A stretch of DNA of 64,000 nucleotides from Macrostomum lignano (lineage: Eukaryota): NCBI GenBank assembly GCA_002269645.1, contig NIVC01000729.1:76095-140094 (forward strand). Reading direction: 5' to 3'. The notes under the pieces were generated by a model, which made no database searches, was not told where the DNA came from, and saw only the letters and a list, made by a program, of their open reading frames with translations. Shown here one piece after another: positions 5,357-64,000 of the stretch (position 1 is its first letter; each line of letters begins with the position of its first letter). The translations under genes and the position numbers were made by a program.

Positions 5357-5453
5357 ATGTTTGAAAAACTTGTTGTTGATTTGATCAATAGGGCACTTGG
5401 TGATTATGTCGAAAACCTAGATGCATCTCAACTGAATCTGTCAATCTGGAGAG
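5357..5453 (+). CDS. VPS13: VPS13 (A/C-type) exon 1, chorein N-terminal domain
   Basis: MFEKLVVDLINRALGDYVENLDASQLNLSIWRG is the chorein N-terminus; donor G|GTAAGA, phase 1. Confidence 0.95.
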
Positions 5454-5720
5454 GTAAGACTTATAAGTTCTACCAACAAATCATATCATTTGCTTGGCAA
5501 ACTGTCTGGTTGTTCAATGACAATATTCACTGGTCAGGATAATTAATTTAATTTATTTTATATATTACAAAGCCTTATACCATTAAATATGCAATATATA
5601 TATGCAGCTAAATATGCAGTGATAGAAATACATTAATTGTAAATAGGCTTATAATACTGGTAGAACCGCACACTTGATAATGAGAAGTAAAAGAAAGGAG
5701 ATTGCGAGCATTTTCATTAG

Positions 5721-5923: not shown

Positions 5924-6960
5924 TTAGAACACTCTCAGGAGAGCACCGGCCCCAGAATAACCCAACTGTTTATTTAAAGTTGGTTGCCTGTTTTTAATGT
6001 ACATAGCTTCAATAATCTTAAGGCGATGATCGATATTGCAACTGTGTATGATGGTAAACCCATCCTTTTGTTCACTGTTGGCGCATTCACTACAGGCCAT
6101 AAGAGGTGTAGGACCAAGACTGCCACACACCAAGACTGCCATACTTGGGAGAGCTAGGCTAGGAGGGAGGAATTTGGCTTGCCATGTTATTGGATGGTGC
6201 TAAGATGGGGAGAGCCAGCAAGACAAAGCCACAAGAGAGGAACTGGTGAGCAGGCCAGCCTGGCTAGGTAGGTGAGTGAGCCAGGCTCCTTGTTTTTTTC
6301 ATTTAATTTGAATTGTTAAAATTGCCCTGGTTGACTTGAAATCATTTTGGGCCACTTATTTATCTTATTAGTGACCAATCTTGGGACACTTCTTCCTCAT
6401 CTAACTCCACAACCCATCATAACCAATAGCAATGCTAGAAGAAGATTGGTAACTTCCCCTCAATTCCAATAGTCAGTAAGAGCTGTGGCGGTCTTGGTAT
6501 ATGGCGGTCTTGGTCATGCGCCCCATAAGATGGTCTTGCACTACTGATGGCTTTAACCAGTGTTCTCTGCCCCTAACATACAAGTGCTGTTTTGATTTAC
6601 CTAGGTAGGTAACTCTCTGATCAACAGAGCACTGGAATTGGTAGACAACACCTGCATGTAGTTGCAGAGGCACTCTTGTAAAGCTTGTAAGCCTAGTTGG
6701 TACTACAAGCTTTCAATTTAATCATAGGATGTAAATCAAACTCGAGAGACTAAAAATTTTCTGTCTATGCTCGATATGTGTTGGCATTGCAGAGTTCAAT
6801 TTAATCCTGGGGGTATCAATTTGATCATTCTATGTTTTCAATACACATTTTCATTGTGTACTTGTTTTTCAATTGGCTTGTTTTAAGAGCAATTTGGATG
6901 AGCTACTTGAGTAGGATGGCAGTGAGTGAAATTTTGGAGCTGTAAATAACAATATCAACT
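5924..6960 (-). mobile_element. Penelope-like element fragment (GIY-YIG endonuclease region), interrupted by a MITE
   Basis: GVVYQFQCSVDQRVTYLGKSKQHLYVRGREH (GIY-YIG motif) and C-terminal LKIIEAMYIKNRQPTLNKQL. The 5' boundary is approximate. Confidence 0.85.
6103..6524. mobile_element. 422-bp non-autonomous TIR element (Sola2-like termini)
   Basis: Imperfect ~40-bp TIRs with ACCAAGACYGCCA subrepeats, GAG/GGG termini, 4-bp TSD ATAA (6099-6102 and 6525-6528). Confidence 0.8.
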
Positions 6961-51175: not shown

Positions 51176-51278
51176 GAAACCGCGGACAATGACAAACCGG
51201 CCGAGCCGAAACTCTATGAGAACGGCCTGTGGCAGGTGCGACCGATTGAGTCTGAGAATCTGCCTTTCCTTAGCACCG
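51176..51278 (+). CDS. VPS13: VPS13 exon 21
   Basis: ETADNDKPAEPKLYENGLWQVRPIESENLPFLST; G|GTGAGT. Confidence 0.88.
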
Positions 51279-53346: not shown

Positions 53347-53750
53347 TTTTTTTACACTTCAGGCTCTGGGTTTGGGTCTTGTTGAATCAGCGCTGTTGGT
53401 AGTTGAAAGTGCAACCTTTTTGAGTCATCCGCTATCATGGTTATCTGAATATGCATAGGTTACTTCTATGGGCCTCGAGCGAACTGGTTGGACCCAGTGT
53501 CCAGAAGAATTGTACCCTATCTGCAACATCTCAGTGCGTCTTTGTTTAAGTTCTCGATTCATGTGTTATCGAAAAGTTGGCAAACCTTTTTATTTGGCGT
53601 TACAATTTTGTAGTTTAAAAATTGAGCAAAGAACAATTTTTTTGCATTGTTCTGTTCAAACCTGTTTAAAAACTTAACTGCTCACTTTTTGTTGTGATAA
53701 AACTGACACTTGTATAGAATGATTTTTTTATATTGCTTCCTCATGCGCAG

Positions 53751-53842
53751 ACGCAACTTCTCCCGATGGTACAGCCATGGCTGAGCAAGGCTTCGATGTT
53801 GGGGCCGCCTTGGACGAGATTGAACAGCGCCGAAAGCAGGAG
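53751..53842 (+). CDS. VPS13: VPS13 exon 22 (last exon found in the window)
   Basis: GCGCAG|AC GCA...; DATSPDGTAMAEQGFDVGAALDEIEQRRKQE|GTAGGT; phase 1 to 0. Weakly conserved, supported mainly by phase and splice sites. Confidence 0.75.
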
Positions 53843-53889
53843 GTAGGTTTCTGTCTTGCTTAAATTAGAATGGCAGTTTTATTGATATT

Positions 53890-54545
53890 ATTGTTTAGTG
53901 CACTTTTAGGGAGAGAGGCGGGCGGAGTGGGGTGGGGCACTTTATGGGAGAGAGACGGGCGGAGTGAGGTGGGGCACTTTTAGGGAGAGAGGCGGGCGGA
54001 GTGAGGTGGGGCACTTTAAGGGAGAGAGGCGGGCAGAGTGAGGTGGGGCACTTTAAGGGAGAGAGACGGGCAGAGTGAGGCGGGGCACTTTTAGGGAGAG
54101 AGGCGGGCGGAGTGGGGTGGGGCACTTTAAGGGAGAGAGGTGGGCGGAGTGGGGTGGGGCACTTTTAGGGAGAGAGGTGGGCGGAGTGGGGTGGGGCACT
54201 TTTAGGGAGAGAGGCGGGCGGAGTGAGTTGGGGCACTTTAAGGGAGAGAGGCGGGCAGAGTGAGGTGGGGCACTTTAAGGGAGAGAGACGGGCAGAGTGA
54301 GGCGGGGCACTTTTAGGGAGAGAGGCGGGCGGAGTGGGGTGGGGCACTTTAAGGGAGAGAGGTGGGCGGAGTGGGGTGGGGCACTTTTAGGGAGAGAGGT
54401 GGGCGGAGTGGGGTGGGGCACTTTTAGGGAGAGAGGCGGGCGGAGTGGGGTGGGGCACTTTATGGGAGAGAGACGGGCGGAGTGAGGTGGGGCACTTTTG
54501 GGAGAGAAGCGGTCGGAGTGGGGTGGGGCACTCTATGTAGAGAGG
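53890..54545. repeat. G-rich minisatellite, 37 bp GAGAGAGGCGGGCGGAGTGGGGTGGGGCACTTTTAGG
   Basis: Tandem array. Confidence 0.95.
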
Positions 54546-56303
54546 CGAGCGTAAAAATTCATTTATATTGGGAAAATTAGAAATGTTTGGGTTGTTATAG
54601 AGGCTCAGTAAGGCCAAGATTAAGAAACAAAAAATACCTATATAACCAGACGTGTTTATTAGCTTCATAATATCTTAATTGGTTGTATCTTGCTCACGAT
54701 TTTGCTATCATTGTCAAGGACAGCCGGACCCTATAGTTGACCTCAATTTACTCAAGTCAGTGTATTTTGTATTCGTGAATCAGTCTCAGACACGTGTGTA
54801 ACACAAGTCAGGCGGTTATTGTGTATAATTACTAAGTCTTTTTTTAACAATGGGTCTCTCGTCGGTAACTTTGCCCTGCCTCAAAGGCACTGCGGGATGC
54901 CAAGCCTTAAGCGGCGCATTGCCGACTGAGAGAAAAAGGGAATTGTGCGCTTTTTTTAAAAAAAAAGATCCTACCCCTGTTCAGGAAGAGTTATGGGAGC
55001 TAGGCTAAGGTATTTTCCCCATCTTCTCCTTTACGACTGGGCAAGTAAAGTCTGCTTCGCCTAAGATGAATTGTTTTGTTGTTTAGAAATAAATACAACT
55101 CATACTGCCATGCTATAGAAATCGATCAAATTTATTGGCGATCCCCATTATTAAAGTTTAGATTTCGCACGATTTTACAAGTTGTCACACTGAGCGCAGT
55201 AAGCTGATTGATTGAATGTCTTGCCGTCACCCTTTCATCGCTCGCTTCTTACTTTGCTTAACGCCTCCTGTGCCCAGTTCTACGAGTTTAAGTTCTCACT
55301 CAGCCCCGCGTACCACAAATCTCGTCTCTTCCCACTCGCCGTGACCCTCCATGCAGCTCTCGGACCCGCTAACTGTTCCCCCCTATAGTCGTACTTGTAG
55401 GAATTTGATTAGCATAAGTGGACTTCGGGAAGTGAGGTCGTCTGCTGCTACTGTTTCTGCCTTCTGCTGCTTTTGGAGGTCGAACCCCCTCCCCCATATG
55501 TCCCTCATCGCTCTCTCTCTCCCCCTCTCTCTCTCATCTGACGAAAGGCCACTCATGCATTCCAATAGCTGGAGACTGGGCTATGAAACGCTTGTGTGAG
55601 CCCGCGTTTGTGTGTATGTGTGCGCGCGCGCGTGTGTGTGACTTGGCTTAAAATTGTGCTGACTGCTTCTGGGTTCGATTTAAAGCCAGGGCTTAAGACC
55701 TCTGGCCTGAGTCGGGTCAGAAATGCGATATGATTTGCTCTCTTTCCCCTGCTTCCCTTATCTGGCACTGTCTCAAATAAAGCATCTTAGACGATTGAAC
55801 ACTGTTGACTCTCGCTTGTGAGTCTCAGTTAAAAAAGTCAACTCTATATGCATCAGTATATAAGTTTGCGGTTCATCATACCATCAACTAAATAATCATT
55901 GTATTTGTCTCTCTGATTAAAATCTTAGCATCAACGTTAGCTTTGATTATTGAGGCATCAATTCTTTGAAACTGGCTTTCTATCGAGAAAATCGTAGCTA
56001 ATTTAACACCATATTATATAACGAAGACACAATGTAAAACAACATTTGAAGTGTGTTTCATTGTCTTGCAAAAATTAATGCAATGCTTTAGTAATAATAC
56101 ATGCATGCGATAAATATACATAATTCATATACAACAGTTTCAAATTTAAAAGTTTTGTAACAAATACGCTCAAGTATATTGAAAAATATCTACTAGGACA
56201 AGAAAAACTGAATGAAATACGACGCAATGTGTGTCCGATCAGTTGGTTCTTTGTTTAAAAAACCCGTCATTGGTTAATTGGACCCTGACTCACACCCACG
56301 CGT

Positions 56304-58946
56304 TTAGAGCGTGGCTTCGTTGTAACTCACCGCCGACTCATCGTCTTCTGGCGATCGGAATGTTGACATGCGCGAAGTCCTTGGGAATGTGACCACGCTA
56401 GGGTAGAGGCTCAGGCTGCTGACGCTTGGTACCCGACTGTTTGATAGGGCCACCTGACTGCCCTGCTGATGCCGAGTGCACTGGTGCTGCTGGCTATTCA
56501 ACAGCTGCAGCTGATGTTGATGCTGAAGCTGTTGCTGAAGCTGCCGTTCAGCCGATGTGTCGTAGACGTTGGAGTAGCTCACGCACTCTTGCGGGGTTTT
56601 GTTCAATAAGCCGCCTCGTTGGTCTTCGTTAAGAGTTTGAAAGCTGGACGAATAGTCTCGCGTGTTACTCGATGCCGTCTTCGACGCCGCCAGCTGGTCC
56701 ACTGTTCTCAGCGGCATTCTGTACAGGACCTGCTTCCAGAAGTTCTTCTTGCCGTAGCGAACTATTGACTTACTGGCTGCCGCATTGCGTCTAACCAAAT
56801 TCTGCGGCAGGTGCTTAATGTTTGGAAACAAAATATGAATCAGCCTATTGGCCTGACGGGGCTGAGTTCTGGTTAGAAAGGTGACAGTCAGTTGATAATC
56901 TGTACACACGTCCACGTCTGAGATGAAGCTCTCTGTAATCACCGCTATGACCCGTTTGCTATTCTCTACCGCGTGGCACACGGCGCTATACGTTAGTAGG
57001 CCCGGAATGCAGGCTCTGTCATGTGTGCAGAGGACGTAGGGACTCTTCCTGTTAGTTAGCTTTTCTAGTAGCACGGATATAACCCAGTCGCTGTCGCTTG
57101 GATGGAACAACACAAAAGCGTCACAGCGCTTCAGCTCACCGTTGCACTCGTCGCGATCAAACGGATGAAAGCCGAACCTAGTAAATAGGCTCACCCTTGC
57201 GCAGAAAAGCAAGAAAAAGGCCAGCGTTATCAGCGCTAAGACGCCGCTGACAGCTGACGAGCTGAGCGCCAGCTGATCGTAGCTTCGATTTGAAGACCTT
57301 GGATCGGGCCGATCGCAGAAGTCCTTCAGTCTCATTTCGAGCAGCGGCCTGTTAAATAGCCACGTTGGCTCAGCGCAGCGTATCTCGTTTTCGTGTCTCA
57401 GGTAGGGTCGCATCTTATGCAGCCATTCGCTCATCCAGCTGTTGTTACAGTGGCAGGACCAGGGATTATGATCCAATCGCATCTCTTTCAAGTGCGGAAA
57501 CATCAGCTCGACAATCTGCCTGTCCAGCGCGGTGAACAGATTGTGATTGAGGTTGATTACCTCCAGGCGTCTTAGCTTGTTAAAAAACTTTACAGGCATT
57601 GTTTCAATGCCGGTGCCTCGCAGATCCAACGTTTGCGCGTCTTTGTAGACGCTTGGCATACCTGGCAGGCTTCTTGACAGGCGGCTGGCGCTAAAGTTAA
57701 ATCGGTACACGTATTGATCTGGCAAGTCTGTCATTTCTCTTCTGTGCAGCAGGCGGCCTAGGTTCACACCAAAGCAATCGACTGATATAGTCTTACGCCA
57801 AGGCTCTTCGGTACATGTACACTGTTCGTTGTTGCACTTGTCCCGGCATACGAGGTCTTCTCGCTTCAGTAGTAGTTTGAATGCTGAGTTGAATACTGAC
57901 TGATAGTTTAGACTCAATGGCTTCACGCAGTACGGTAGAGCCATCGGATCCGGTAAGAAATGAGAAATGTTACTTGCTGATACGTACATGTTGTAGTCCA
58001 AACAGTCGCACTCCAGGGGGTTCTGATGCAAACTGATGATGGTGATTGCATGCCGGGCGCCCAGCACTCTGATTGTCTTGTCGTCCATGTTCCATCCTCT
58101 AATCAGATCTATCAGGTGTCTCACCCTGTTGTTAGTCAGGCTCAGGACTAGGTTGATTCTAGTGACAAGTTCTTTTGTCCAGCGAATGTGAGTCGCAAAA
58201 TTCTGTCTTGGGTCTGGACTGCCTTCCGTGTCATCAAAGCGTTGAATTCGATTGTGATCGAGCAATATACGCAGCTTCTCCTCGCTGTGCATTGCTCGAA
58301 TCTTAAGTGGCCAGTTGGCAAGAGCTTCCAATTTGTTGTACGATAAATCGATGTAGTTTAAGTAGTTGGCAGACGATTCAAATGCCTTTGAAGAGACATA
58401 GCGTATTTGATTGTGTATGATGCTGAGCTTCTGCAAGGACGGTGTAGCTAGACAGTAGTCTGTCAGATTCACTAACAAATTTCTGTCTAGTACGATCTCT
58501 TTGAGCTCTTTGAACGGACTAAACATCCTTGGTGGAAGCTGTCTGATTCTATTGTCGGTCAGGTTGAGATGGGTCAGCTTGGTGAGCAGTGCTAGCTTGG
58601 GTAGAACGTCCTGCATTCGCTCCACCCCAGACATGACTAGCACGTTGAGATCGACCAGAGCTGGGCATTCGATCAGCCTGGCAACCAGCTCGCCGCTGCC
58701 CTGTGCGTAGCCGCAGTCCAGGCTGAGATGGTACTGCGCATAAGCGTAGCGAAACTCGCACTGTCTGCACTGCGTTGGGCAATAGCGCCTGCACTGCACC
58801 AGCCGGTCCTTCAGACTGGCTGACCCCGTTGCGCTGCCTACAATGGCAGATTGTAGCGACGGCAGATGCAGTGACAGCAGCTGCAACACTAGCAATAGTA
58901 GCTTCCCCGATTGCAGCCGTTCCATGTTCTGTTGAAGATCAGTCAT
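56304..58946 (-). CDS. Toll-like receptor, multiple-cysteine-cluster (protostome) type, single coding exon, 880 aa
   Basis: Hydrophobic signal (LLLLVLQLLSL), Cys-rich LRRNT, LxxLxLxxN repeats, LRRCT NPLECDC, second LRRNT (C..C.C....VDC), more LRRs, LRRCT NPWSCHC, TM (SAVSGVLALITLAFFLLFCA), HPFDRDEC linker, TIR box1 CDAFVLF, box2 LCTHDRACIPG, box3 FWKQ. Start at 58946 or 58925. Confidence 0.93.
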   Translation of the reverse strand: MTDLQQNMERLQSGKLLLLVLQLLSLHLPSLQSAIVGSATGSASLKDRLVQCRRYCPTQCRQCEFRYAYAQYHLSLDCGYAQGSGELVARLIECPALVDLNVLVMSGVERMQDVLPKLALLTKLTHLNLTDNRIRQLPPRMFSPFKELKEIVLDRNLLVNLTDYCLATPSLQKLSIIHNQIRYVSSKAFESSANYLNYIDLSYNKLEALANWPLKIRAMHSEEKLRILLDHNRIQRFDDTEGSPDPRQNFATHIRWTKELVTRINLVLSLTNNRVRHLIDLIRGWNMDDKTIRVLGARHAITIISLHQNPLECDCLDYNMYVSASNISHFLPDPMALPYCVKPLSLNYQSVFNSAFKLLLKREDLVCRDKCNNEQCTCTEEPWRKTISVDCFGVNLGRLLHRREMTDLPDQYVYRFNFSASRLSRSLPGMPSVYKDAQTLDLRGTGIETMPVKFFNKLRRLEVINLNHNLFTALDRQIVELMFPHLKEMRLDHNPWSCHCNNSWMSEWLHKMRPYLRHENEIRCAEPTWLFNRPLLEMRLKDFCDRPDPRSSNRSYDQLALSSSAVSGVLALITLAFFLLFCARVSLFTRFGFHPFDRDECNGELKRCDAFVLFHPSDSDWVISVLLEKLTNRKSPYVLCTHDRACIPGLLTYSAVCHAVENSKRVIAVITESFISDVDVCTDYQLTVTFLTRTQPRQANRLIHILFPNIKHLPQNLVRRNAAASKSIVRYGKKNFWKQVLYRMPLRTVDQLAASKTASSNTRDYSSSFQTLNEDQRGGLLNKTPQECVSYSNVYDTSAERQLQQQLQHQHQLQLLNSQQHQCTRHQQGSQVALSNSRVPSVSSLSLYPSVVTFPRTSRMSTFRSPEDDESAVSYNEATL

Positions 58947-60189
58947 TCACCGACGTCTAGGACTTCGAATTGCCGGGCGATTCGTTCATTTCGCAGTTTC
59001 CTTGGAGACCTGTGTGTGTGCGTTTCTGTGCGTTGCTTCGTTCTCGATCTCCGGTGTTTTTTTTAATTATACGCTTCAATGGCTTCTGTAACTGTCGCAG
59101 TAGGAATTGACTTCGAAGTCTCAATATTGACTTAGCTCTTCAATTTTTTGCCGGAGCTGTCTCTTTTTCCTAAGACCTCTCGCAACCTGAAGTGTCACCT
59201 GCTTTTAAAAGCTGATTTTTTCCCAAAATCGGGCCAAGTCTGAGCGGTGGCTCCCACTCCCTGCCGTCCATCCCCAATCCTTCTCCTCCCTCTCTGTCCC
59301 TGCCTCCCCAGTGCAGGTTTTGCAATGCTTCGCTTCACTGGTTTGATTGGACTTCCATGCGCCTGTCCAATCAAGCTTTAGTCTCTTTCTATTGCCACGC
59401 CACGAGAAACTCTTGGCCGCCTGCTGCACACTTTCTCGGACTCGGGGGGAGCGAGAGTTCTTTCGTGCTTTTAAAATTTTTTAGGAAGTTTTTTTTCTTC
59501 TATCAACTTTAAGCAGCGTCCCGGTTGCATTGTTTGGGTCAGCTGGAATGTGTTTGACCGCGCAACTTTCACTTTGTATTGAATAGCCACGTCCGCTAGC
59601 TCAAGATGCCTGTCGCTTTACATTCACTCGCTAGAGCTACACGCACTTTCAGGATCCCTATTTTAACTTTCTATAGTTTATAATTTGAGGTTAACCGTTA
59701 ATAAAAGATCTTTATTGGCTATACATGTAGACTTTTCTCTGAGCGGCAAGGCATCGGATTTTATTGTCGCGCACATCGGTACAGTCGTCTCTCTGGCGGG
59801 ACTCGTGTATCTCACAGTCGCCAGCGCATTTCCGTGACTGCTGATGCAGAATTTCTCAATGCGGATTCTTGCCACCGCGAGTCTATTACTTGTTATAATG
59901 TCTCTCACTTCCGTATTCCATGTCTGTTAAGCATCAGGCTACATGACTAAACCAAGTTTAACTGCTGTAACAGCCCTTCTCTCTGTTGTCATTGTCATTC
60001 ATTCTCAATGCCGTTTTAGGAAGAACTTTATTGACTTTAACGCCAAAAAGTGTATTTTTGGTACCTATTGTACAAAACAGGTAAGAAAAGAGTAGAGAAA
60101 AGAAGAGAGAGAGAGAAAACGAAATGAGAAAAGGGTAGCCAGTTGAGACAGAATGAAGGAGACTGGTGAGAGAAAGGGTGAGAGAGGAT

Positions 60190-60480
60190 CAGATAAGAGA
60201 GACAGGTGAGATCGAGAGATGGAGACAGGTGGGATCGAGAGGGGAGACAGATGAGATCGAGAGGGGGAGACAGGTGAGATCGAGAGATGGAGACAGGTGG
60301 GATCGAGAGGGGAGACAGATGAGATCGAGAGGGGGAGACAGGTGGGATCAATAGGGAGAGACAGGTGGGATCGAGAGGGGAAGACAGGTAGGAGCTAGAG
60401 GGGGAGACAGGTGGGATCGAGAAGGAGAGACAGGTGGGATCGAGAGGGGAGACAGGTAGAAGCGAGATGGGGGAGACAAG
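60190..60480. repeat. Minisatellite GAGACAGGTG(A/G)GATCGAGAGGG
   Basis: Tandem array. Confidence 0.9.
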
Positions 60481-61489
60481 TGGAAGAAAATGGGAGTCAG
60501 TTAAAATAAATCCAATGTAGGGCTCAAATTAGGGAGCAGAGCTATAGTTTAAAAAATGGATAAATGATGAGTTGCTTTTATGAAGCAGTATCATATATTT
60601 TAGATTCTAGTCAAATCATAATATTATTATAATATTAATCATATACTTAAATTCTATACAAATACTTAAATCTGAAATAAAAGGTGTTCAACTTCATATG
60701 TATGCAAGCTTATTCATTTGGCAAGTGCGTTTTGCCCCCCCCCTCCTCATCGCTAATAGCTGGTGCTAATAGTTAAGCACTGTTTGATTTTCTCATCTGC
60801 GATATTTGACTACTCCAATTCAGGAGAGGGGGGGGTTAACTTGCCGCTGTGCAGCCCGGGTCGATAATGCATAATTGGCATAATTTGCCAACCAAACCTG
60901 GCCGATGTAATGTGCACTTTAATGAGTAGCACCCTGGGAGTTTGGCAGGTGCACCGCGTGTGTGTGTGCCGTACGGATAAATTTAGAGGAGAATAATAAA
61001 ATAAAAATAACTATGAATTATCATTATTGGTCCGTACGCGCGGGAGTGTCCGGTGGTCCGGGTTGGCCACTGGATCTGCGTATATATTAGCTCCATATTA
61101 TAAAATATAAAAAACTCTTAAATAGCTTCGTAGTGCCCGAGGAATATAGTTAAACGGGATAATTTATGGACTTCCTGGCAAGGCGAGACTCGCCCTTCTT
61201 CCCACAGTATTAGCCTTCTTCTTCTTGGCTATCCCTGACTGTCTCTCTTTAGACTGGATATCTTAATTTCCAATAAAACCAAGAAAACGTACCATTTCTT
61301 TTGTAAGAGTTCTCTTTGTGTACATGTGCTTGGTTTTTAGTTTCGTTCACTGTTTTTGAACCAAGTTTGATTGTAACCATATTTTCAAATATGACAACAG
61401 ACCTCAAGAAGGACCTCCGAAGACTGTATGTCGTTGAAACAGCTTCTCGGGTTATAATTATCTTATATGTTGAAGCAAGCATCAAATAA

Positions 61490-62050
61490 GTGCTGCAATA
61501 TTATTTGTTGCGATCACAGATAATTAGCACATCATAAATGACGTTAGATGTTGTTGCAATCGCGGATAACTAGCACACCATAAATGACGTTAGATTTTTT
61601 TTGCAATTACGGATAATTAGCACACCATAAATGACGTCAGATGTTGTTGCAATCGCGGATTATTAGCACATTATAAATGATGTAAGATTTTGTTGCAATC
61701 GCGGATAATTAGCACCCCATAAATGACGTAAAGATATTATTGCAATCGCGGATAATTAGCACACCATAAATGACGTCAGATGTTGCAATTAAGGATAATT
61801 AGCACATTATAAATGATGTAAGATTTTGTTGCAATCGCGGATAATTAGCACCCCATAAATGACGTCAAATGTTGTTGCAATTATCGGTCGCAAGAAAATC
61901 GGTCCAGCCGTTTTTGCTAAAATCGATCACATACCCACATACCTACCGACAGACCATTTTTAGTATATGGAGATAACTGACGTCAGATGTTGTTGCAATC
62001 GCGGATAATTAGCACATTATAAATGATGTAAGATGTTGCATTCGCGGACA
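61490..62050. repeat. Minisatellite, 46-47 bp GCAATCGCGGATAATTAGCACACCATAAATGACGTCAGATGTTGTT
   Basis: Tandem array interrupted by a Helitron-like end. Confidence 0.9.
61890..61975 (+). mobile_element. Helitron-like non-autonomous element 3' end (copy 2)
   Basis: AAAATCGGTCCAGCCGTTTTT...ACATAC...CATTTTTAGTATATGGA, matches 10105-10200. Confidence 0.5.
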
Positions 62051-62919
62051 AGCAAAACATTACACGGAACTCAGTAGTTGAAGCATACGTCAGATAAAGA
62101 AGCACAATAACTACACCGGATGCTGTTGCAATCTCTCAAATTGACACTAGATAGACCGACCTAGCGCTAAGTACCATCATATAACAACTCAGTTTGTTGA
62201 AAAAAATTACTGAAACATCACATACTGCCGAGACAGTCCAGACGCTTATGGCCTATGATAACTTGGCAATAACTTCGATCGCAGCTTTGTGGACTGTTGC
62301 AACGACACAGATATTTTTATGCTGATAACTTCGGCTCGGCAGAACTTTGAAACTCTATCCGACACACATTGTCGAGAGTCTGTCCCGCCGTGTTCTAACA
62401 CACTTGCGCTTCTGCTGCTAGCCCGGTCTGGGCTATATCAGTGTGCCTTCCCTCATCCTTGACCCGGGGCCCGCCTCTACTTTCATTATTCATGCTAAAT
62501 TTGTTCCTCTTTTGCCCCGGCTCCAGCCTTCAGTGGTCTGTCTCGATTATTTTCCTACACATCGCGGCAATAGCAGAAACAACAACAGCTAGCTGGCGTC
62601 CACCATTCGCCCCCTCCCACTGTATCCTGCTGTTAAATATTTAATTTGACAGAATAATTTTATCTATATAATATTACTTACATGTGAAAGGCTTTTCTGG
62701 AATTCATTCTGTTATGCTTTCAGCTTTGACTGTCGAGCGCACCCCTATTCTTTCATGCTGTCTGCTTGCTTTTCTATCTTCTGGCGGTACATTTCTGAGA
62801 AAAGTGCAGCTTTTTTTCGGGTTCGATTCTTGACTCAATCAGAACAATTTGTGCCCTTAAGAAAGATTCTTAACTCTGCATTGCTTCAGTTCAACCAGTT
62901 GTAAAATGGGTGCCAGCGT

Positions 62920-63043
62920 TAGCTGGGGTAATTTAGGGTATGTGTGGCGATCCATCAGTCCTTGGACTGAACAGCTTTCAGATGCGCCGCGCAATAGCTG
63001 CGGCTGAGCTGTCGGTTGCACATCTGGCCCAATTGAGGCAGGT
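62920..63043 (+). mobile_element. 5'-truncated second copy of the SINE at 53114
   Basis: AGCTGGGGTAATT..GTGTGGCGA..CAGTCCTTGGACTGA..GATGCGCCGCGC.ATAGCTGCG.CTGAGCTGTCGGTTG shared. Confidence 0.75.
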
Positions 63044-64000
63044 GTAATCAATTATTATTTAGCGAAGAAGTCACACTGTTTCCCGCCAATGTCTAATTTA
63101 ACGCCCAAACCCTAACTTGATGTCTCATACCTGAATCTAATGCTCTAATTTCCTAATTTTGCCCTTCAACTCTTCATAGTTAATGCGCCAACCCCACTGT
63201 AAATGTGACGTTGAAATCCTCAATTTAAATGTGCCTCTTGTCTCTTCCTAACGGACTCAAAAAGGGTTTCACATCTTGCAAAATGTGTGAAAATCCAAAA
63301 GGAAATTGGATTTTCCGTTGTCTTTTAAAGAAACAGCAAGCATTGCCCAGGTATTTTGAGCGGGGATGATCTGAGTGGCCTTTGATTAGCTAGTGGATAA
63401 TTGGATCTCAAATTTGAGCAGTTTAATGAGTCCCTTGGTCATAATAACTTCTACTAGGCGTTGAAACTAGCTAATTCGAAAAAGTAAACAGTTGGAATAT
63501 TGTTGCGCATATTTGTATTCTACGAAGGCTCCGATTCCAAACATGGAATTTGGATGTGAATTATGATGCAGCAGCCACCTTCCGTGCAGCTGTGTTGCGA
63601 GGTCCCTATGGGAGTCGGACGCACACTGAATGGGCGTTTTATATTGTGCCAAAATTAGACAAATTAGCTGGTGTTGCACACACATGCATACAAGCCTGCC
63701 ATTCTGCACTAATGTTGTTTTATGCGTTCCTATTTGTATCGCAGCTCCACTGGAAATAATATAATCATATTTTATTCTAATTAATAATTTATTAGCCTGA
63801 AAAGAAGTCGCAACCACCTGATGTTCGCTCGCATTGTATGGTTCTGTTGGACAAGCCTCTCTTGGGTAGTTGCTATGGGAGAGCGGAAAAGTCTCAAAGA
63901 TCTTTGGTAGTTTGTTCAAATATCGATAACTTGTGTGACCTTTCCATCAACTAGTCCTAGGTGAATAAGATAGATAACTAGATGTATAAATTTCTGTATC

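What the first reader, a model, noticed from the sequence alone, without database searches (positions are those of the whole stretch)
56304..58946. A complete LRR-TM-TIR receptor in what may be a flatworm genome
Seen: full multiple-cysteine-cluster TLR architecture with the HPFDRDEC juxtamembrane motif, which I associate with lophotrochozoan TLRs. Recalled, not verified: surveys have generally described canonical TLRs as absent from Platyhelminthes. If the host is macrostomid, this is either retention in an early-branching flatworm or horizontal acquisition. Its position inside a host-type intron argues against simple contamination.
Basis: inference. Interest (0 to 1): 0.8.

Follow-up and report, generated by a model that had tools for sequence, protein, structure and literature searches.

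The report
Unannotated Toll-like receptor in Macrostomum lignano
The flatworm Macrostomum lignano, published as lacking Toll-like receptors like all other flatworms, carries an intact and evolutionarily constrained Toll-like receptor gene that gene annotation missed because it lies backwards inside an intron of another gene.

Summary
Window 56304-58946 (-) is one 880-codon ORF encoding signal peptide, LRRNT, LRRs, internal LRRCT+LRRNT, LRRs, LRRCT, TM helix, FHPFDRDEC motif, TIR domain and a Q-rich tail.

The host is Macrostomum lignano. The window is 100% identical to Mlig_3_7 contig NIVC01000729.1. The ORF lies antisense in a ~15-kb intron of VPS13 (PAA77695.1).

No gene is called there in any of three duplicated loci, and the protein is absent from a 15-billion-protein collection. 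All three loci keep the ORF intact. Differences are 15 synonymous to 3 nonsynonymous (dN/dS 0.058, P = 9e-8), matching the VPS13 exons (0.05). Codon usage is host-like. This rules out chance ORF, pseudogene, contamination and recent transfer.

Surveys from 2021 and 2023 state that flatworms, M. lignano included, have no TLRs. The 2021 survey screened predicted proteins only.

The receptor is collinear, cysteine for cysteine and with an identical FHPFDRDEC motif, with a large family of short multi-cluster TLRs found in metagenome contigs (25-30% identity).

Verdict: a new member of a known kind that corrects a published absence. Expression, ligand, adaptors and clade placement were not tested.

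The parts
56304..58946 (-). Complete single-exon TLR coding sequence (880 codons plus TAA stop)
   Evidence: ORF list and translation. In-frame TGA directly upstream of the ATG. Intact in three paralogous loci with dN/dS 0.058.
58848..58946 (-). N-terminal signal-peptide-like segment (residues 1 to about 33; hydrophobic core LLLLVLQLLSL)
   Evidence: Hydropathy peak at residues 17-36. The cleavage site is inferred, not predicted by a dedicated tool.
58713..58793 (-). N-terminal LRRNT-like cysteine cluster (C52, C56, C60, C63, C78)
   Evidence: Read from the sequence. Aligns with the CxxC-xC...VDC cap of the FHPFDRDE-family TLRs.
58017..58664 (-). First LRR block (residues about 95-310)
   Evidence: Pfam LRR_4 and LRR_8. 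LxxLxLxxNxL units at residues 124, 148, 171, 196 and 301. PDB matches to TLR3, LGR, LRIG and other LRR proteins.
57846..58022 (-). Internal LRRCT (NPLECDC...C340...C367)
   Evidence: Cysteines align column for column with insect-type mcc Tolls and with the metagenome TLR family. The Pfam LRRCT model did not score.
57774..57848 (-). Internal LRRNT (C367/C371, C376-x-C378, VDC391)
   Evidence: Alignment columns shared with insect-type Tolls and with the FHPFDRDE family. A PDB match to mosquito Toll5A residues 585-740 starts here.
57465..57773 (-). Second, membrane-proximal LRR block (residues about 392-494)
   Evidence: Pfam LRR_8 best stretch at residues 438-494. LRR units at residues 413, 437 and 461.
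57315..57464 (-). Membrane-proximal LRRCT (NPWSCHC...C524...C544)
   Evidence: C498, C500 and C524 are invariant in alignment A1. Aligns to the TLR3 LRRCT.
57186..57254 (-). Transmembrane helix (residues 565-587)
   Evidence: Kyte-Doolittle maximum of 2.5. Helix 556-590 in the AlphaFold model.
57144..57170 (-). Juxtamembrane motif FHPFDRDEC (residues 593-601)
   Evidence: Read from the sequence. The exact octapeptide FHPFDRDE is present in all 80 retrieved metagenome TLR loci. It is absent from the insect Tolls and bat TLR13 in alignment A1.
56712..57128 (-). TIR domain (residues about 607-745): box 1 DAFVLF, box 2 LCTHDRACIPG, box 3 FWKQVLYRMP
   Evidence: Pfam TIR above the gathering cut-off. 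TLR2 TIR E = 1.7e-9. Foldseek top hits are IL-1RAcP, MyD88, TRR-2 and TLR2 TIR domains.
56307..56711 (-). C-terminal Ser/Gln-rich tail (residues 746-880), low complexity, no domain found
   Evidence: No Pfam hit. pLDDT below 50. Still under constraint: 1 nonsynonymous against 2 synonymous differences.
58947..59846 (-). About 900 nt of 5' flank, more conserved between the three paralogous loci than the distal intron (candidate promoter or 5' UTR; inferred)
   Evidence: 0-1.35% divergence within 900 nt of the ATG against 2.0-2.7% at 900-1500 nt. Alignment shown.
53750..53842 (+). Last VPS13 exon upstream of the TLR (aa about 1980-2010 of PAA77695.1); the host intron starts after it
   Evidence: tblastn of P0011.
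53843..64000 (+). Window part of the ~15-kb VPS13 intron that contains the TLR on the opposite strand (next exon at window-equivalent position ~68805, outside the window)
   Evidence: VPS13 gene range L001 10001-98318.
5357..5455 (+). First coding exon of the host gene VPS13 (MFEKLVVDLINRALGDYVENLDASQLNLSIWRG)
   Evidence: tblastn of P0011, 100% identity. Pfam VPS13_N on downstream exons.

Best explanation
This is a real, functional, nuclear gene of Macrostomum lignano that encodes a canonical type-I Toll-like receptor of the multiple-cysteine-cluster (protostome) type. It is a single-exon gene nested antisense in a ~15-kb intron of VPS13. It is present in at least three near-identical copies, produced by the recent duplication of this genome region. 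The public annotation missed it, and that is why protein-based surveys scored the species, and so the phylum, as TLR-free.

Shown here: the architecture, the host, the nesting, the missing annotation and the purifying selection.

Inferred mechanism, from established knowledge of TLR and Toll signalling. The two-block LRR ectodomain binds a ligand, either a microbial pattern directly or a Spaetzle-like cystine-knot protein as in insects. Binding dimerises the receptor. The paired TIR domains, which keep the BB-loop Pro-Gly, then recruit a TIR adaptor such as MyD88 and activate TRAF/TAK1/MAPK and possibly Rel signalling. The biological role could be immunity, development or neural wiring, and remains open.

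Inferred history: vertical retention of a spiralian short-mcc TLR carrying the FHPFDRDEC juxtamembrane signature. Under this reading TLR loss in flatworms happened after Macrostomorpha branched off, not at the base of the phylum.
For: Architecture.

Host and position: VPS13 97% identical to PAA77695.1. Window 100% identical to NIVC01000729.1. Flanking exons mapped.

Not annotated: no gene is called at the site in L001, L002 or L003, although other nested genes are listed there. Exact look-ups of 6 sequence variants found nothing. No encoding contig is on record. A search with the TM-TIR segment found nothing.

Function: three intact 880-codon copies. dN/dS is 0.058 in every pair, with 3 nonsynonymous out of 18 variable sites against a neutral expectation of 77% (P = 9e-8). 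dS of 0.008-0.025 is similar to flank divergence. The VPS13 control gives dN/dS 0.049-0.054 at dS 0.024-0.032.

Native origin: RSCU correlation with VPS13 exons is r = 0.68, against 0.10 with non-coding DNA. GC3 is 0.62 (TLR) and 0.71 (VPS13), and non-coding GC is 0.39.

Family kinship: the exact FHPFDRDEC motif and collinear cysteine modules are shared with 80 of 80 metagenome TLR loci. The ectodomain scores about 150 bits against them and 43-59 bits against insect Tolls and TLR13.

Why it was missed: the 2021 survey ran hmmsearch against predicted proteins.
Against: There is no expression evidence. The gene is missing from a transcriptome-guided annotation, which could mean very low or conditional expression.

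Box 2 of the TIR domain reads RACIPG where the consensus is RDxxPG, and the Pfam TIR score is modest (27.4 bits). Signalling competence is therefore assumed, not shown.

Downstream partners (MyD88, IRAK/Pelle, Rel) and any Spaetzle-like ligand were not searched for in M. lignano.

The nearest relatives are only 25-30% identical and their source organisms are unverified. Neither the clade placement nor vertical descent has been demonstrated by a phylogeny.

The paralog comparison covers only about 1-3% of synonymous divergence, so it shows recent constraint only.
Confidence: 0.78

Rival explanations
1. Horizontal acquisition. The TLR entered the Macrostomum lineage from another animal, for example an annelid or mollusc carrying the FHPFDRDEC family, and is not a retained ancestral flatworm gene.
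For: Every other flatworm surveyed lacks TLRs (PMC8609888, PMC10279657). The gene is intronless and sits in an intron, as an inserted or retroposed sequence might. Its nearest relatives were found in metagenome contigs of non-flatworm origin.
Against: The best relatives are only 25-30% identical. Codon usage and GC3 match the host. No transposon or retroposition hallmarks were noticed in the flanks. TLR genes are commonly intronless in invertebrates, which is general knowledge and is also seen in the metagenome loci. Macrostomorpha is an early branch, so one later loss explains the distribution as well. An ancient transfer cannot be excluded.
Confidence: 0.07
2. The gene is functional but does not work as a microbial pattern-recognition receptor. 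It acts in development, cell adhesion, or neuronal or stem-cell signalling, as several Drosophila Tolls do.
For: In insects, mcc-type Tolls mostly have developmental or neurotrophic roles and bind endogenous ligands (established knowledge). Orus-Alcalde et al. report developmental expression of protostome TLRs (PMC8609888). There is a single TLR type here and not an expanded, diversifying repertoire. Purifying selection is strong, with no sign of diversifying selection.
Against: Nothing here separates the two roles. The related FHPFDRDE family is hugely expanded in its host or hosts (500 hits), a pattern usually linked to immune recognition.
Confidence: 0.3
3. Non-functional relic or chance ORF: a decaying pseudogene, or a long ORF arising in repeat-rich intronic DNA.
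For: The window produces many long spurious ORFs in minisatellites. The gene is unannotated.
Against: The sequence is non-repetitive and high-entropy. It has a full domain architecture. Three copies are intact with dN/dS 0.058, P = 9e-8, equal to the essential host gene. It shows coding-type codon bias.
Confidence: 0.02
4. Contamination or misassembly: the TLR belongs to another organism, such as food diatoms, a co-cultured animal or a sequencing contaminant, and was joined to flatworm DNA by mistake.
For: The species is reported to lack TLRs. No close homolog was found in protein databases.
Against: The ORF lies in the middle of a 203-kb contig, between exons of one M. lignano gene. The same arrangement is found on two more contigs of 784 kb and 315 kb, with flanks alignable for kilobases on both sides. 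Codon usage is host-like.
Confidence: 0.01

Closest known systems
Short multiple-cysteine-cluster TLRs carrying the juxtamembrane FHPFDRDEC motif, seen here as an expanded intronless family in JGI metagenome contigs (L004-L083). They probably correspond to the short protostome-type TLRs described in molluscs and annelids; that link is my recollection and is not verified.
   Same: The module order is identical: LRRNT, LRRs, LRRCT, LRRNT, about 4 LRRs, LRRCT, TM, (W/F)(K/G)FHPFDRDEC, TIR. Cysteines align column for column. Local motifs are shared (CDCxDYxxY; NPWxCxCxNxWMxxWL). Both are single-exon genes.
   Different: Overall identity is only 25-30%, and 35-38% across TM and juxtamembrane. The TIR core is no closer to them than to insect or vertebrate TIRs. 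M. lignano has one type in 3 recent copies and not hundreds of variants. It has a 135-residue Ser/Gln-rich C-terminal tail. Box 1 and box 2 deviate (FHPSD; RACIPG). The source organism of the family is unverified.
Insect Toll and Toll-6/7/8-type receptors (P-type/mcc TLRs), for example Aedes Toll5A (PDB 7B1B), Drosophila Toll, and the moth protein P0001
   Same: An mcc ectodomain with an internal LRRCT-LRRNT junction whose cysteines align. Single TM. TIR with boxes 1-3. PDB match to Toll5A residues 585-740.
   Different: Identity is 21-24%. The insect proteins are much longer (1270-1410 aa, many more LRRs). They have no FHPFDRDEC motif. The ectodomain scores only 43-59 bits.
Vertebrate TLRs (TLR3 full-length structures; TLR2, TLR1, TLR6 and TLR10 TIR domains)
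   Same: The best PDB sequence hits run through LRRCT, TM and TIR. The TIR sequence match to TLR2 has E = 1.7e-9, and TIR folds match with TM-scores of 0.65-0.77. The BB-loop Pro-Gly is conserved.
   Different: Vertebrate TLRs have a single cysteine cluster (V-type). Here there is an internal cluster. Identity is about 20-25%.
TIR-only and LRR-only 'TLR-like' proteins of flatworms and Hydra (for example Hydra TRR-2; the 20 Smed-TIR proteins of Schmidtea)
   Same: The TIR fold is similar to Hydra TRR-2 (TM 0.71-0.75). Until now these were the only Toll-related receptors credited to flatworms (PMC7958881).
   Different: This protein has LRRs, a TM helix and a TIR domain in one chain, which is the defining TLR combination reported absent from Schmidtea TIR proteins (PMC7958881).

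Membership tests
Toll-like receptor (definition used in PMC8609888: at least one LRR, a TM region and a TIR domain in one protein) | Extracellular leucine-rich repeats | tested here: met
   Pfam LRR_8 E = 1.7e-18 and LRR_4 E = 4.4e-12. Many PDB LRR matches.
Toll-like receptor | A single transmembrane segment between the ectodomain and the TIR domain, with an N-terminal signal peptide (type-I topology) | tested here: met
   One strong hydropathy peak at residues 565-587 and an N-terminal hydrophobic segment. Helix 556-590 in the model. No dedicated topology or signal-peptide predictor was available.
Toll-like receptor | Cytoplasmic TIR domain | tested here: met
   Pfam PF01582 27.4 bits against a cut-off of 21.3. 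TLR2 TIR E = 1.7e-9 and MyD88 E = 3.5e-6. The Foldseek top 30 hits are all animal TIR domains.
Toll-like receptor | TIR signalling motifs: box 1 (F/Y)DAF, box 2 RDxxPG with the BB-loop proline, box 3 FW | tested here: inconclusive
   Box 1 (CDAFVLF) and box 3 (NFWKQVLYRMP) are present. Box 2 is LCTHDRACIPG: Arg, Pro and Gly are kept, and Asp is replaced by Ala. The functional consequence is unknown.
P-type / multiple-cysteine-cluster TLR | More than one LRRCT, usually with an internal LRRCT-LRRNT junction | tested here: met
   Internal cysteines C313, C315, C367, C371, C376, C378 and C391 align with those of four mcc Tolls and are gapped in scc TLR13. The same holds against the metagenome family. 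Pfam LRRNT and LRRCT HMMs gave no hit on the isolated modules, so support comes from alignment and not from a profile.
FHPFDRDEC short-mcc TLR family (metagenome loci L004-L083) | Exact juxtamembrane FHPFDRDEC directly after the TM helix, together with collinear cap modules | tested here: met
   80 of 80 loci carry the octapeptide. Full-length collinear alignment. Ectodomain about 150 bits.
TLR clades alpha, beta and gamma of Orus-Alcalde et al. 2021 | Phylogenetic placement of the LRR-TM-TIR fragment | not tested
   The reference sequences held as a supplement are cut to about 400 N-terminal residues and lack the TIR domain.
Functional Toll pathway | Presence of MyD88, IRAK/Pelle/Tube, TRAF6, Rel/NF-kB and a Spaetzle-like ligand in the same genome | not testable with these tools
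   No collection of M. lignano genome or transcriptome sequence can be searched here beyond the three loci fetched. Planarians are reported to have MyD88, TRAF, TAK1 and p38 components (PMC7958881).
Expressed gene | A transcript from the minus strand of this intron | not testable with these tools
   No RNA-seq access. Indirect evidence only: purifying selection, coding-type codon bias and a conserved 5' flank.

The most novel reading that the evidence does not exclude
Flatworms did not lose Toll-like receptors at the base of the phylum. An ancestral spiralian short-mcc TLR survives, under strong constraint, in Macrostomorpha. The loss then becomes a later event, in the lineage leading to planarians and the parasitic flatworms. 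It also gives a transgenesis-capable, regenerating flatworm model a complete Toll receptor for testing links between innate immunity, stem cells and regeneration.
Probability: 0.65. Interest if true: 0.7.

Novelty: new member of a known kind. Interest (0 to 1): 0.62.

Why it matters
Two independent pan-metazoan surveys (2021 and 2023) and reviews of flatworm immunity treat Platyhelminthes as a TLR-free phylum. The 2021 paper uses M. lignano specifically to argue that the loss happened early in flatworm evolution.

An intact TLR gene in that species, as constrained as its essential host gene, removes the key data point behind that inference. It moves the loss to a later branch. It also weakens the suggested link between TLR loss and parasitism, because free-living planarians lack TLRs while this free-living basal flatworm keeps one.

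It is a worked example of an absence call caused by annotation. A single-exon gene nested antisense in an intron is invisible to surveys that run HMMs on predicted proteins. Other reported losses (gastrotrichs, rotifers, bryozoans, xenacoelomorphs) may deserve six-frame re-screening.

In practice, M. lignano has transgenesis and RNAi, so receptor function can be tested directly.

The exactly conserved FHPFDRDEC juxtamembrane motif, shared across proteins that are only 25-30% identical, marks a functionally important and so far unexplained element of this TLR subfamily.

Tried and rejected
(1) Word-indexed protein searches. The full TLR gave only 9 distant hits. VPS13 exons gave one bird hit. 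The TM-TIR segment gave none. One search missed a 97%-identical M. lignano protein that the exhaustive HMMER search found at once. I therefore did not treat these negatives as evidence on their own. I backed the 'unannotated' claim with the gene tables of three loci and with exact look-ups.

(2) Rfam and tRNA scans of the window, tried as taxonomic markers, found nothing.

(3) The full-length AlphaFold model from a 7-sequence alignment was poor (pLDDT 50) and was not used for fold search. A TIR-only model was used instead.

(4) Pfam LRRNT and LRRCT models on the isolated cysteine-cluster modules gave no hits. The mcc call rests on alignments.

(5) A TIR phylogeny using the published TLR set was not possible. 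The stored supplementary table truncates sequences to about 400 N-terminal residues, and the alignment PDF holds no searchable motif.

(6) Literature searches for the motif string and for the IMG dataset identifiers returned nothing. The organismal source of the related metagenome TLRs stays unverified.

(7) There is no canonical AATAAA within 900 nt downstream of the stop, only the variants AATATA (+127) and AATACA (+402). I draw no conclusion about the 3' end.

(8) The GIY-YIG/Penelope-like reading of ORFs near 6 kb got no Pfam support.
Full report
**Observation.** Window 56304-58946 on the minus strand is one open reading frame of 880 codons plus a stop. An in-frame TGA lies directly upstream of the first ATG. 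In a window where almost every other long ORF is an artefact of minisatellite arrays, this is the longest non-repetitive ORF.

Pfam finds LRR_8 (E = 1.7e-18), LRR_4 and TIR, with PF01582 at 27.4 bits against a gathering cut-off of 21.3. The best PDB sequence matches are full-length TLR3 chains, aligned from the last LRRs through LRRCT and the transmembrane segment into the TIR domain.

Hydropathy shows an N-terminal signal-like segment and a single strong transmembrane peak at residues 565-587.

The TM-TIR segment alone matches the TIR domains of human TLR2 (E = 1.7e-9), MyD88, IL-1RAcP, TLR6, TLR1 and Hydra TRR-2. A TIR-only AlphaFold model (pLDDT 71, pTM 0.71) retrieves only animal signalling TIR domains at the top of a Foldseek search of the PDB, with target-normalised TM-scores up to 0.77. 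Boxes 1 and 3 are canonical. Box 2 reads LCTHDRACIPG: the arginine and the BB-loop Pro-Gly are kept and the aspartate is replaced.

**Multiple cysteine clusters.** There are four cysteine clusters:
- N-terminal LRRNT: C52-C78.
- Internal LRRCT: NPLECDC...C340...C367.
- Internal LRRNT: C371, C376-x-C378, VDC391.
- Membrane-proximal LRRCT: NPWSCHC...C524...C544.

In a MAFFT alignment with the six TIR-bearing homologs, the internal cysteines fall in the same columns as those of four long insect-type Tolls. Two TLR13-type, single-cluster proteins are gapped across the whole region. A PDB match to mosquito Toll5A begins exactly at the internal LRRNT. Pfam's LRRNT and LRRCT models did not score on the isolated modules, so this classification rests on alignments.

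**Host.** The plus strand carries a VPS13-family gene. Its first exon is at 5357-5455, and its exons score on Pfam VPS13_N and VPS13_M. A 718-residue spliced model was searched exhaustively against 1.84 billion representative proteins. It hit one protein at 97% identity (E = 0), and the next best hit was 43%. That protein is PAA77695.1, BOX15_Mlig010693g5 of Macrostomum lignano, with two further full-length copies, g1 and g3.

Fetching the encoding contig showed that the window is 100% identical over all 64,000 bases to NIVC01000729.1 of assembly GCA_002269645.1.

**Genomic context.** VPS13 spans 88 kb. Mapping PAA77695.1 back onto the contig places exons at window 51176-51277 and 53750-53842 (aa about 1946-2010). 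The next exon is at the window-equivalent position ~68805, beyond the window's end. The TLR therefore sits antisense in a ~15-kb VPS13 intron.

The gene tables for this locus and for the two paralogous loci list VPS13, a nested Intu_longin gene, an ankyrin gene and, in one locus, a nested minus-strand integrase. No gene is listed at the TLR position.

The exact protein, its two paralog variants and the Met8-start versions of all three are absent from a 15-billion-sequence collection. No encoding contig is on record. A word search with the TM-TIR segment found nothing.

One caution applies. The word-indexed search tool missed the 97%-identical VPS13 protein. I therefore rely mainly on the gene tables and the exact look-ups for the statement that the gene is unannotated.

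**Is it a working gene?** All three loci carry an intact 880-codon ORF. The copies differ at 18 codons, 15 synonymous and 3 nonsynonymous. Nei-Gojobori dN/dS is 0.058 for every pair. The probability of seeing 3 or fewer nonsynonymous changes out of 18 under neutrality (77% nonsynonymous sites) is 9e-8.

Synonymous divergence (0.8-2.5%) is in the range of the flanking intron divergence (about 1-3%). As a control, 5.1 kb of VPS13 exons compared between the same loci give dS 0.024-0.032 and dN/dS 0.049-0.054. The TLR is therefore as constrained as its essential host gene.

Relative synonymous codon usage correlates with the VPS13 exons (r = 0.68) and not with non-coding DNA read in frame (r = 0.10). 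GC3 is 0.62 for the TLR and 0.71 for VPS13, against 0.39 GC in non-coding sequence.

The 900 nt upstream of the ATG are more conserved between copies than sequence 900-1500 nt upstream. This hints at a conserved promoter or 5' UTR.

Together these results exclude a chance ORF, a pseudogene, contamination, misassembly and a recent foreign insertion.

**Relatives.** Database homologs with names are only 22-24% identical: a moth Toll-like protein, a bat TLR13 and others.

A scan of JGI metagenome contigs with back-translated peptides from the query was unexpectedly informative. There were 570 pattern matches, and 500 of them encode LRR-TM-TIR relatives at 25-30% identity over residues ~56-681. 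All 80 retained loci were found through a single peptide, the juxtamembrane FHPFDRDE. They carry it exactly, in the context (R/K)(W/F)K-FHPFDRDEC-xGED directly after the TM helix.

These intronless ORFs are collinear with the M. lignano protein, module by module and cysteine by cysteine. Shared local signatures include CDCxDYxxY, FVC..HC-PPxCxC...LHVxC and NPWxCxCxNxWMxxWL.

The M. lignano ectodomain scores about 150 bits against them but only 43-59 bits against insect Tolls and TLR13. The TIR core is about equally distant from all of them.

The receptor is therefore a divergent member of a specific short-mcc TLR family defined by this motif. The dataset identifiers and the motif string are not in the searchable literature.

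**Literature.** Orus-Alcalde et al. 2021 list M. lignano with 0 TLRs. [quoted passage not shown] Their method was hmmsearch of a TIR profile against predicted protein sets, which cannot detect an unannotated gene.

Saco et al. [quoted passage not shown] A 2021 review of planarian immunity says the same and notes that none of 20 Schmidtea TIR proteins carries LRRs.

Five literature searches found no report of a TLR in Macrostomum or any other flatworm. Subscription-only papers are not covered.

**Mechanism.**
- Shown: a type-I membrane protein with a two-block LRR ectodomain and a TIR domain that keeps the BB-loop Pro-Gly.
- Inferred from established TLR and Toll biology: ligand-driven dimerisation brings the TIR domains together. 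They recruit a TIR adaptor (MyD88-like) and activate TRAF/TAK1/MAPK and possibly Rel signalling.
- Open: whether the ligand is microbial or an endogenous Spaetzle-like protein, and whether the role is immune or developmental. The single, strongly conserved receptor type argues mildly for an endogenous or narrow ligand. The expansion of the related family elsewhere argues for immune use.

**History.** Vertical retention is favoured. The supporting points are host-like composition, low identity to every sampled relative, no insertion hallmarks, and an early-branching host that requires only one later loss. An ancient horizontal acquisition cannot be excluded without orthologs from other basal flatworms and a proper phylogeny.

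**Verdict.** This is a new member of a known kind, not a new kind of system. It contradicts explicit published statements about this species and phylum, it explains why they were made, and it is directly testable in a tractable model. Interest 0.62.

Noticed in passing
L004-L083 (JGI metagenome contigs; datasets Ga0056xxx, Ga0209xxx, Ga0049xxx, Ga0066192): A very large family (500 confirmed stretches) of intronless short-mcc TLR genes. All carry the exact juxtamembrane sequence FHPFDRDEC, with many near-identical variants per dataset and GC about 0.46. This looks like host-animal DNA in host-associated metagenomes. The source organism is not given by the tools. The motif's function is unknown.
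   Followed up: partly
window 58947-59846 (-): The 900 nt upstream of the TLR start codon diverge by only 0-1.35% between the three paralogous loci, against 2.0-2.7% at 900-1500 nt upstream. This may be a conserved promoter or 5' UTR.
   Followed up: partly
window 8494-54551 and 60199-61883 (many arrays): Nearly every VPS13 intron contains its own long minisatellite array (periods 11-50 bp, up to 71 copies; 76 TRF rows with score of 200 or more). These arrays create many long spurious ORFs in several frames. This is an unusually dense repeat load for a single gene.
   Followed up: no
window 5927-6199 and 6476-6712 (-): Two short ORF fragments in the first VPS13 intron resemble, by eye, the GIY-YIG endonuclease module of Penelope-like retroelements (VYQFQC...YLGKSK...REH; IEAMYIKNRQPTLNKQ). 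Pfam gave no hit.
   Followed up: partly
L001 93753-95558 (+), L002 98150-99952 (+), L003 95514-97316 (+); L002 81054-82613 (-): VPS13 hosts other nested genes outside the window. An Intu_longin_1-domain gene lies on the sense strand in all three loci. A retroelement integrase (rve) lies on the antisense strand in one locus only. Annotated nested genes can therefore appear in these gene tables, which makes the absence of the TLR meaningful.
   Followed up: partly
L001, L002, L003 (contigs NIVC01000729.1, NIVC01000217.1, NIVC01000622.1): The whole ~90-kb VPS13 region exists in at least three copies that differ by about 1-3% at silent sites (dS 0.008-0.032). This is consistent with the recent large-scale duplication known for the M. 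lignano genome. L002 and L003 are closer to each other than either is to L001.
   Followed up: partly
(tool behaviour): The word-indexed protein search did not return M. lignano VPS13, although it is 97% identical to the query and is a cluster representative. The exhaustive HMMER search returned it as the top hit. Negative results from the indexed search should not be read as absence.
   Followed up: yes
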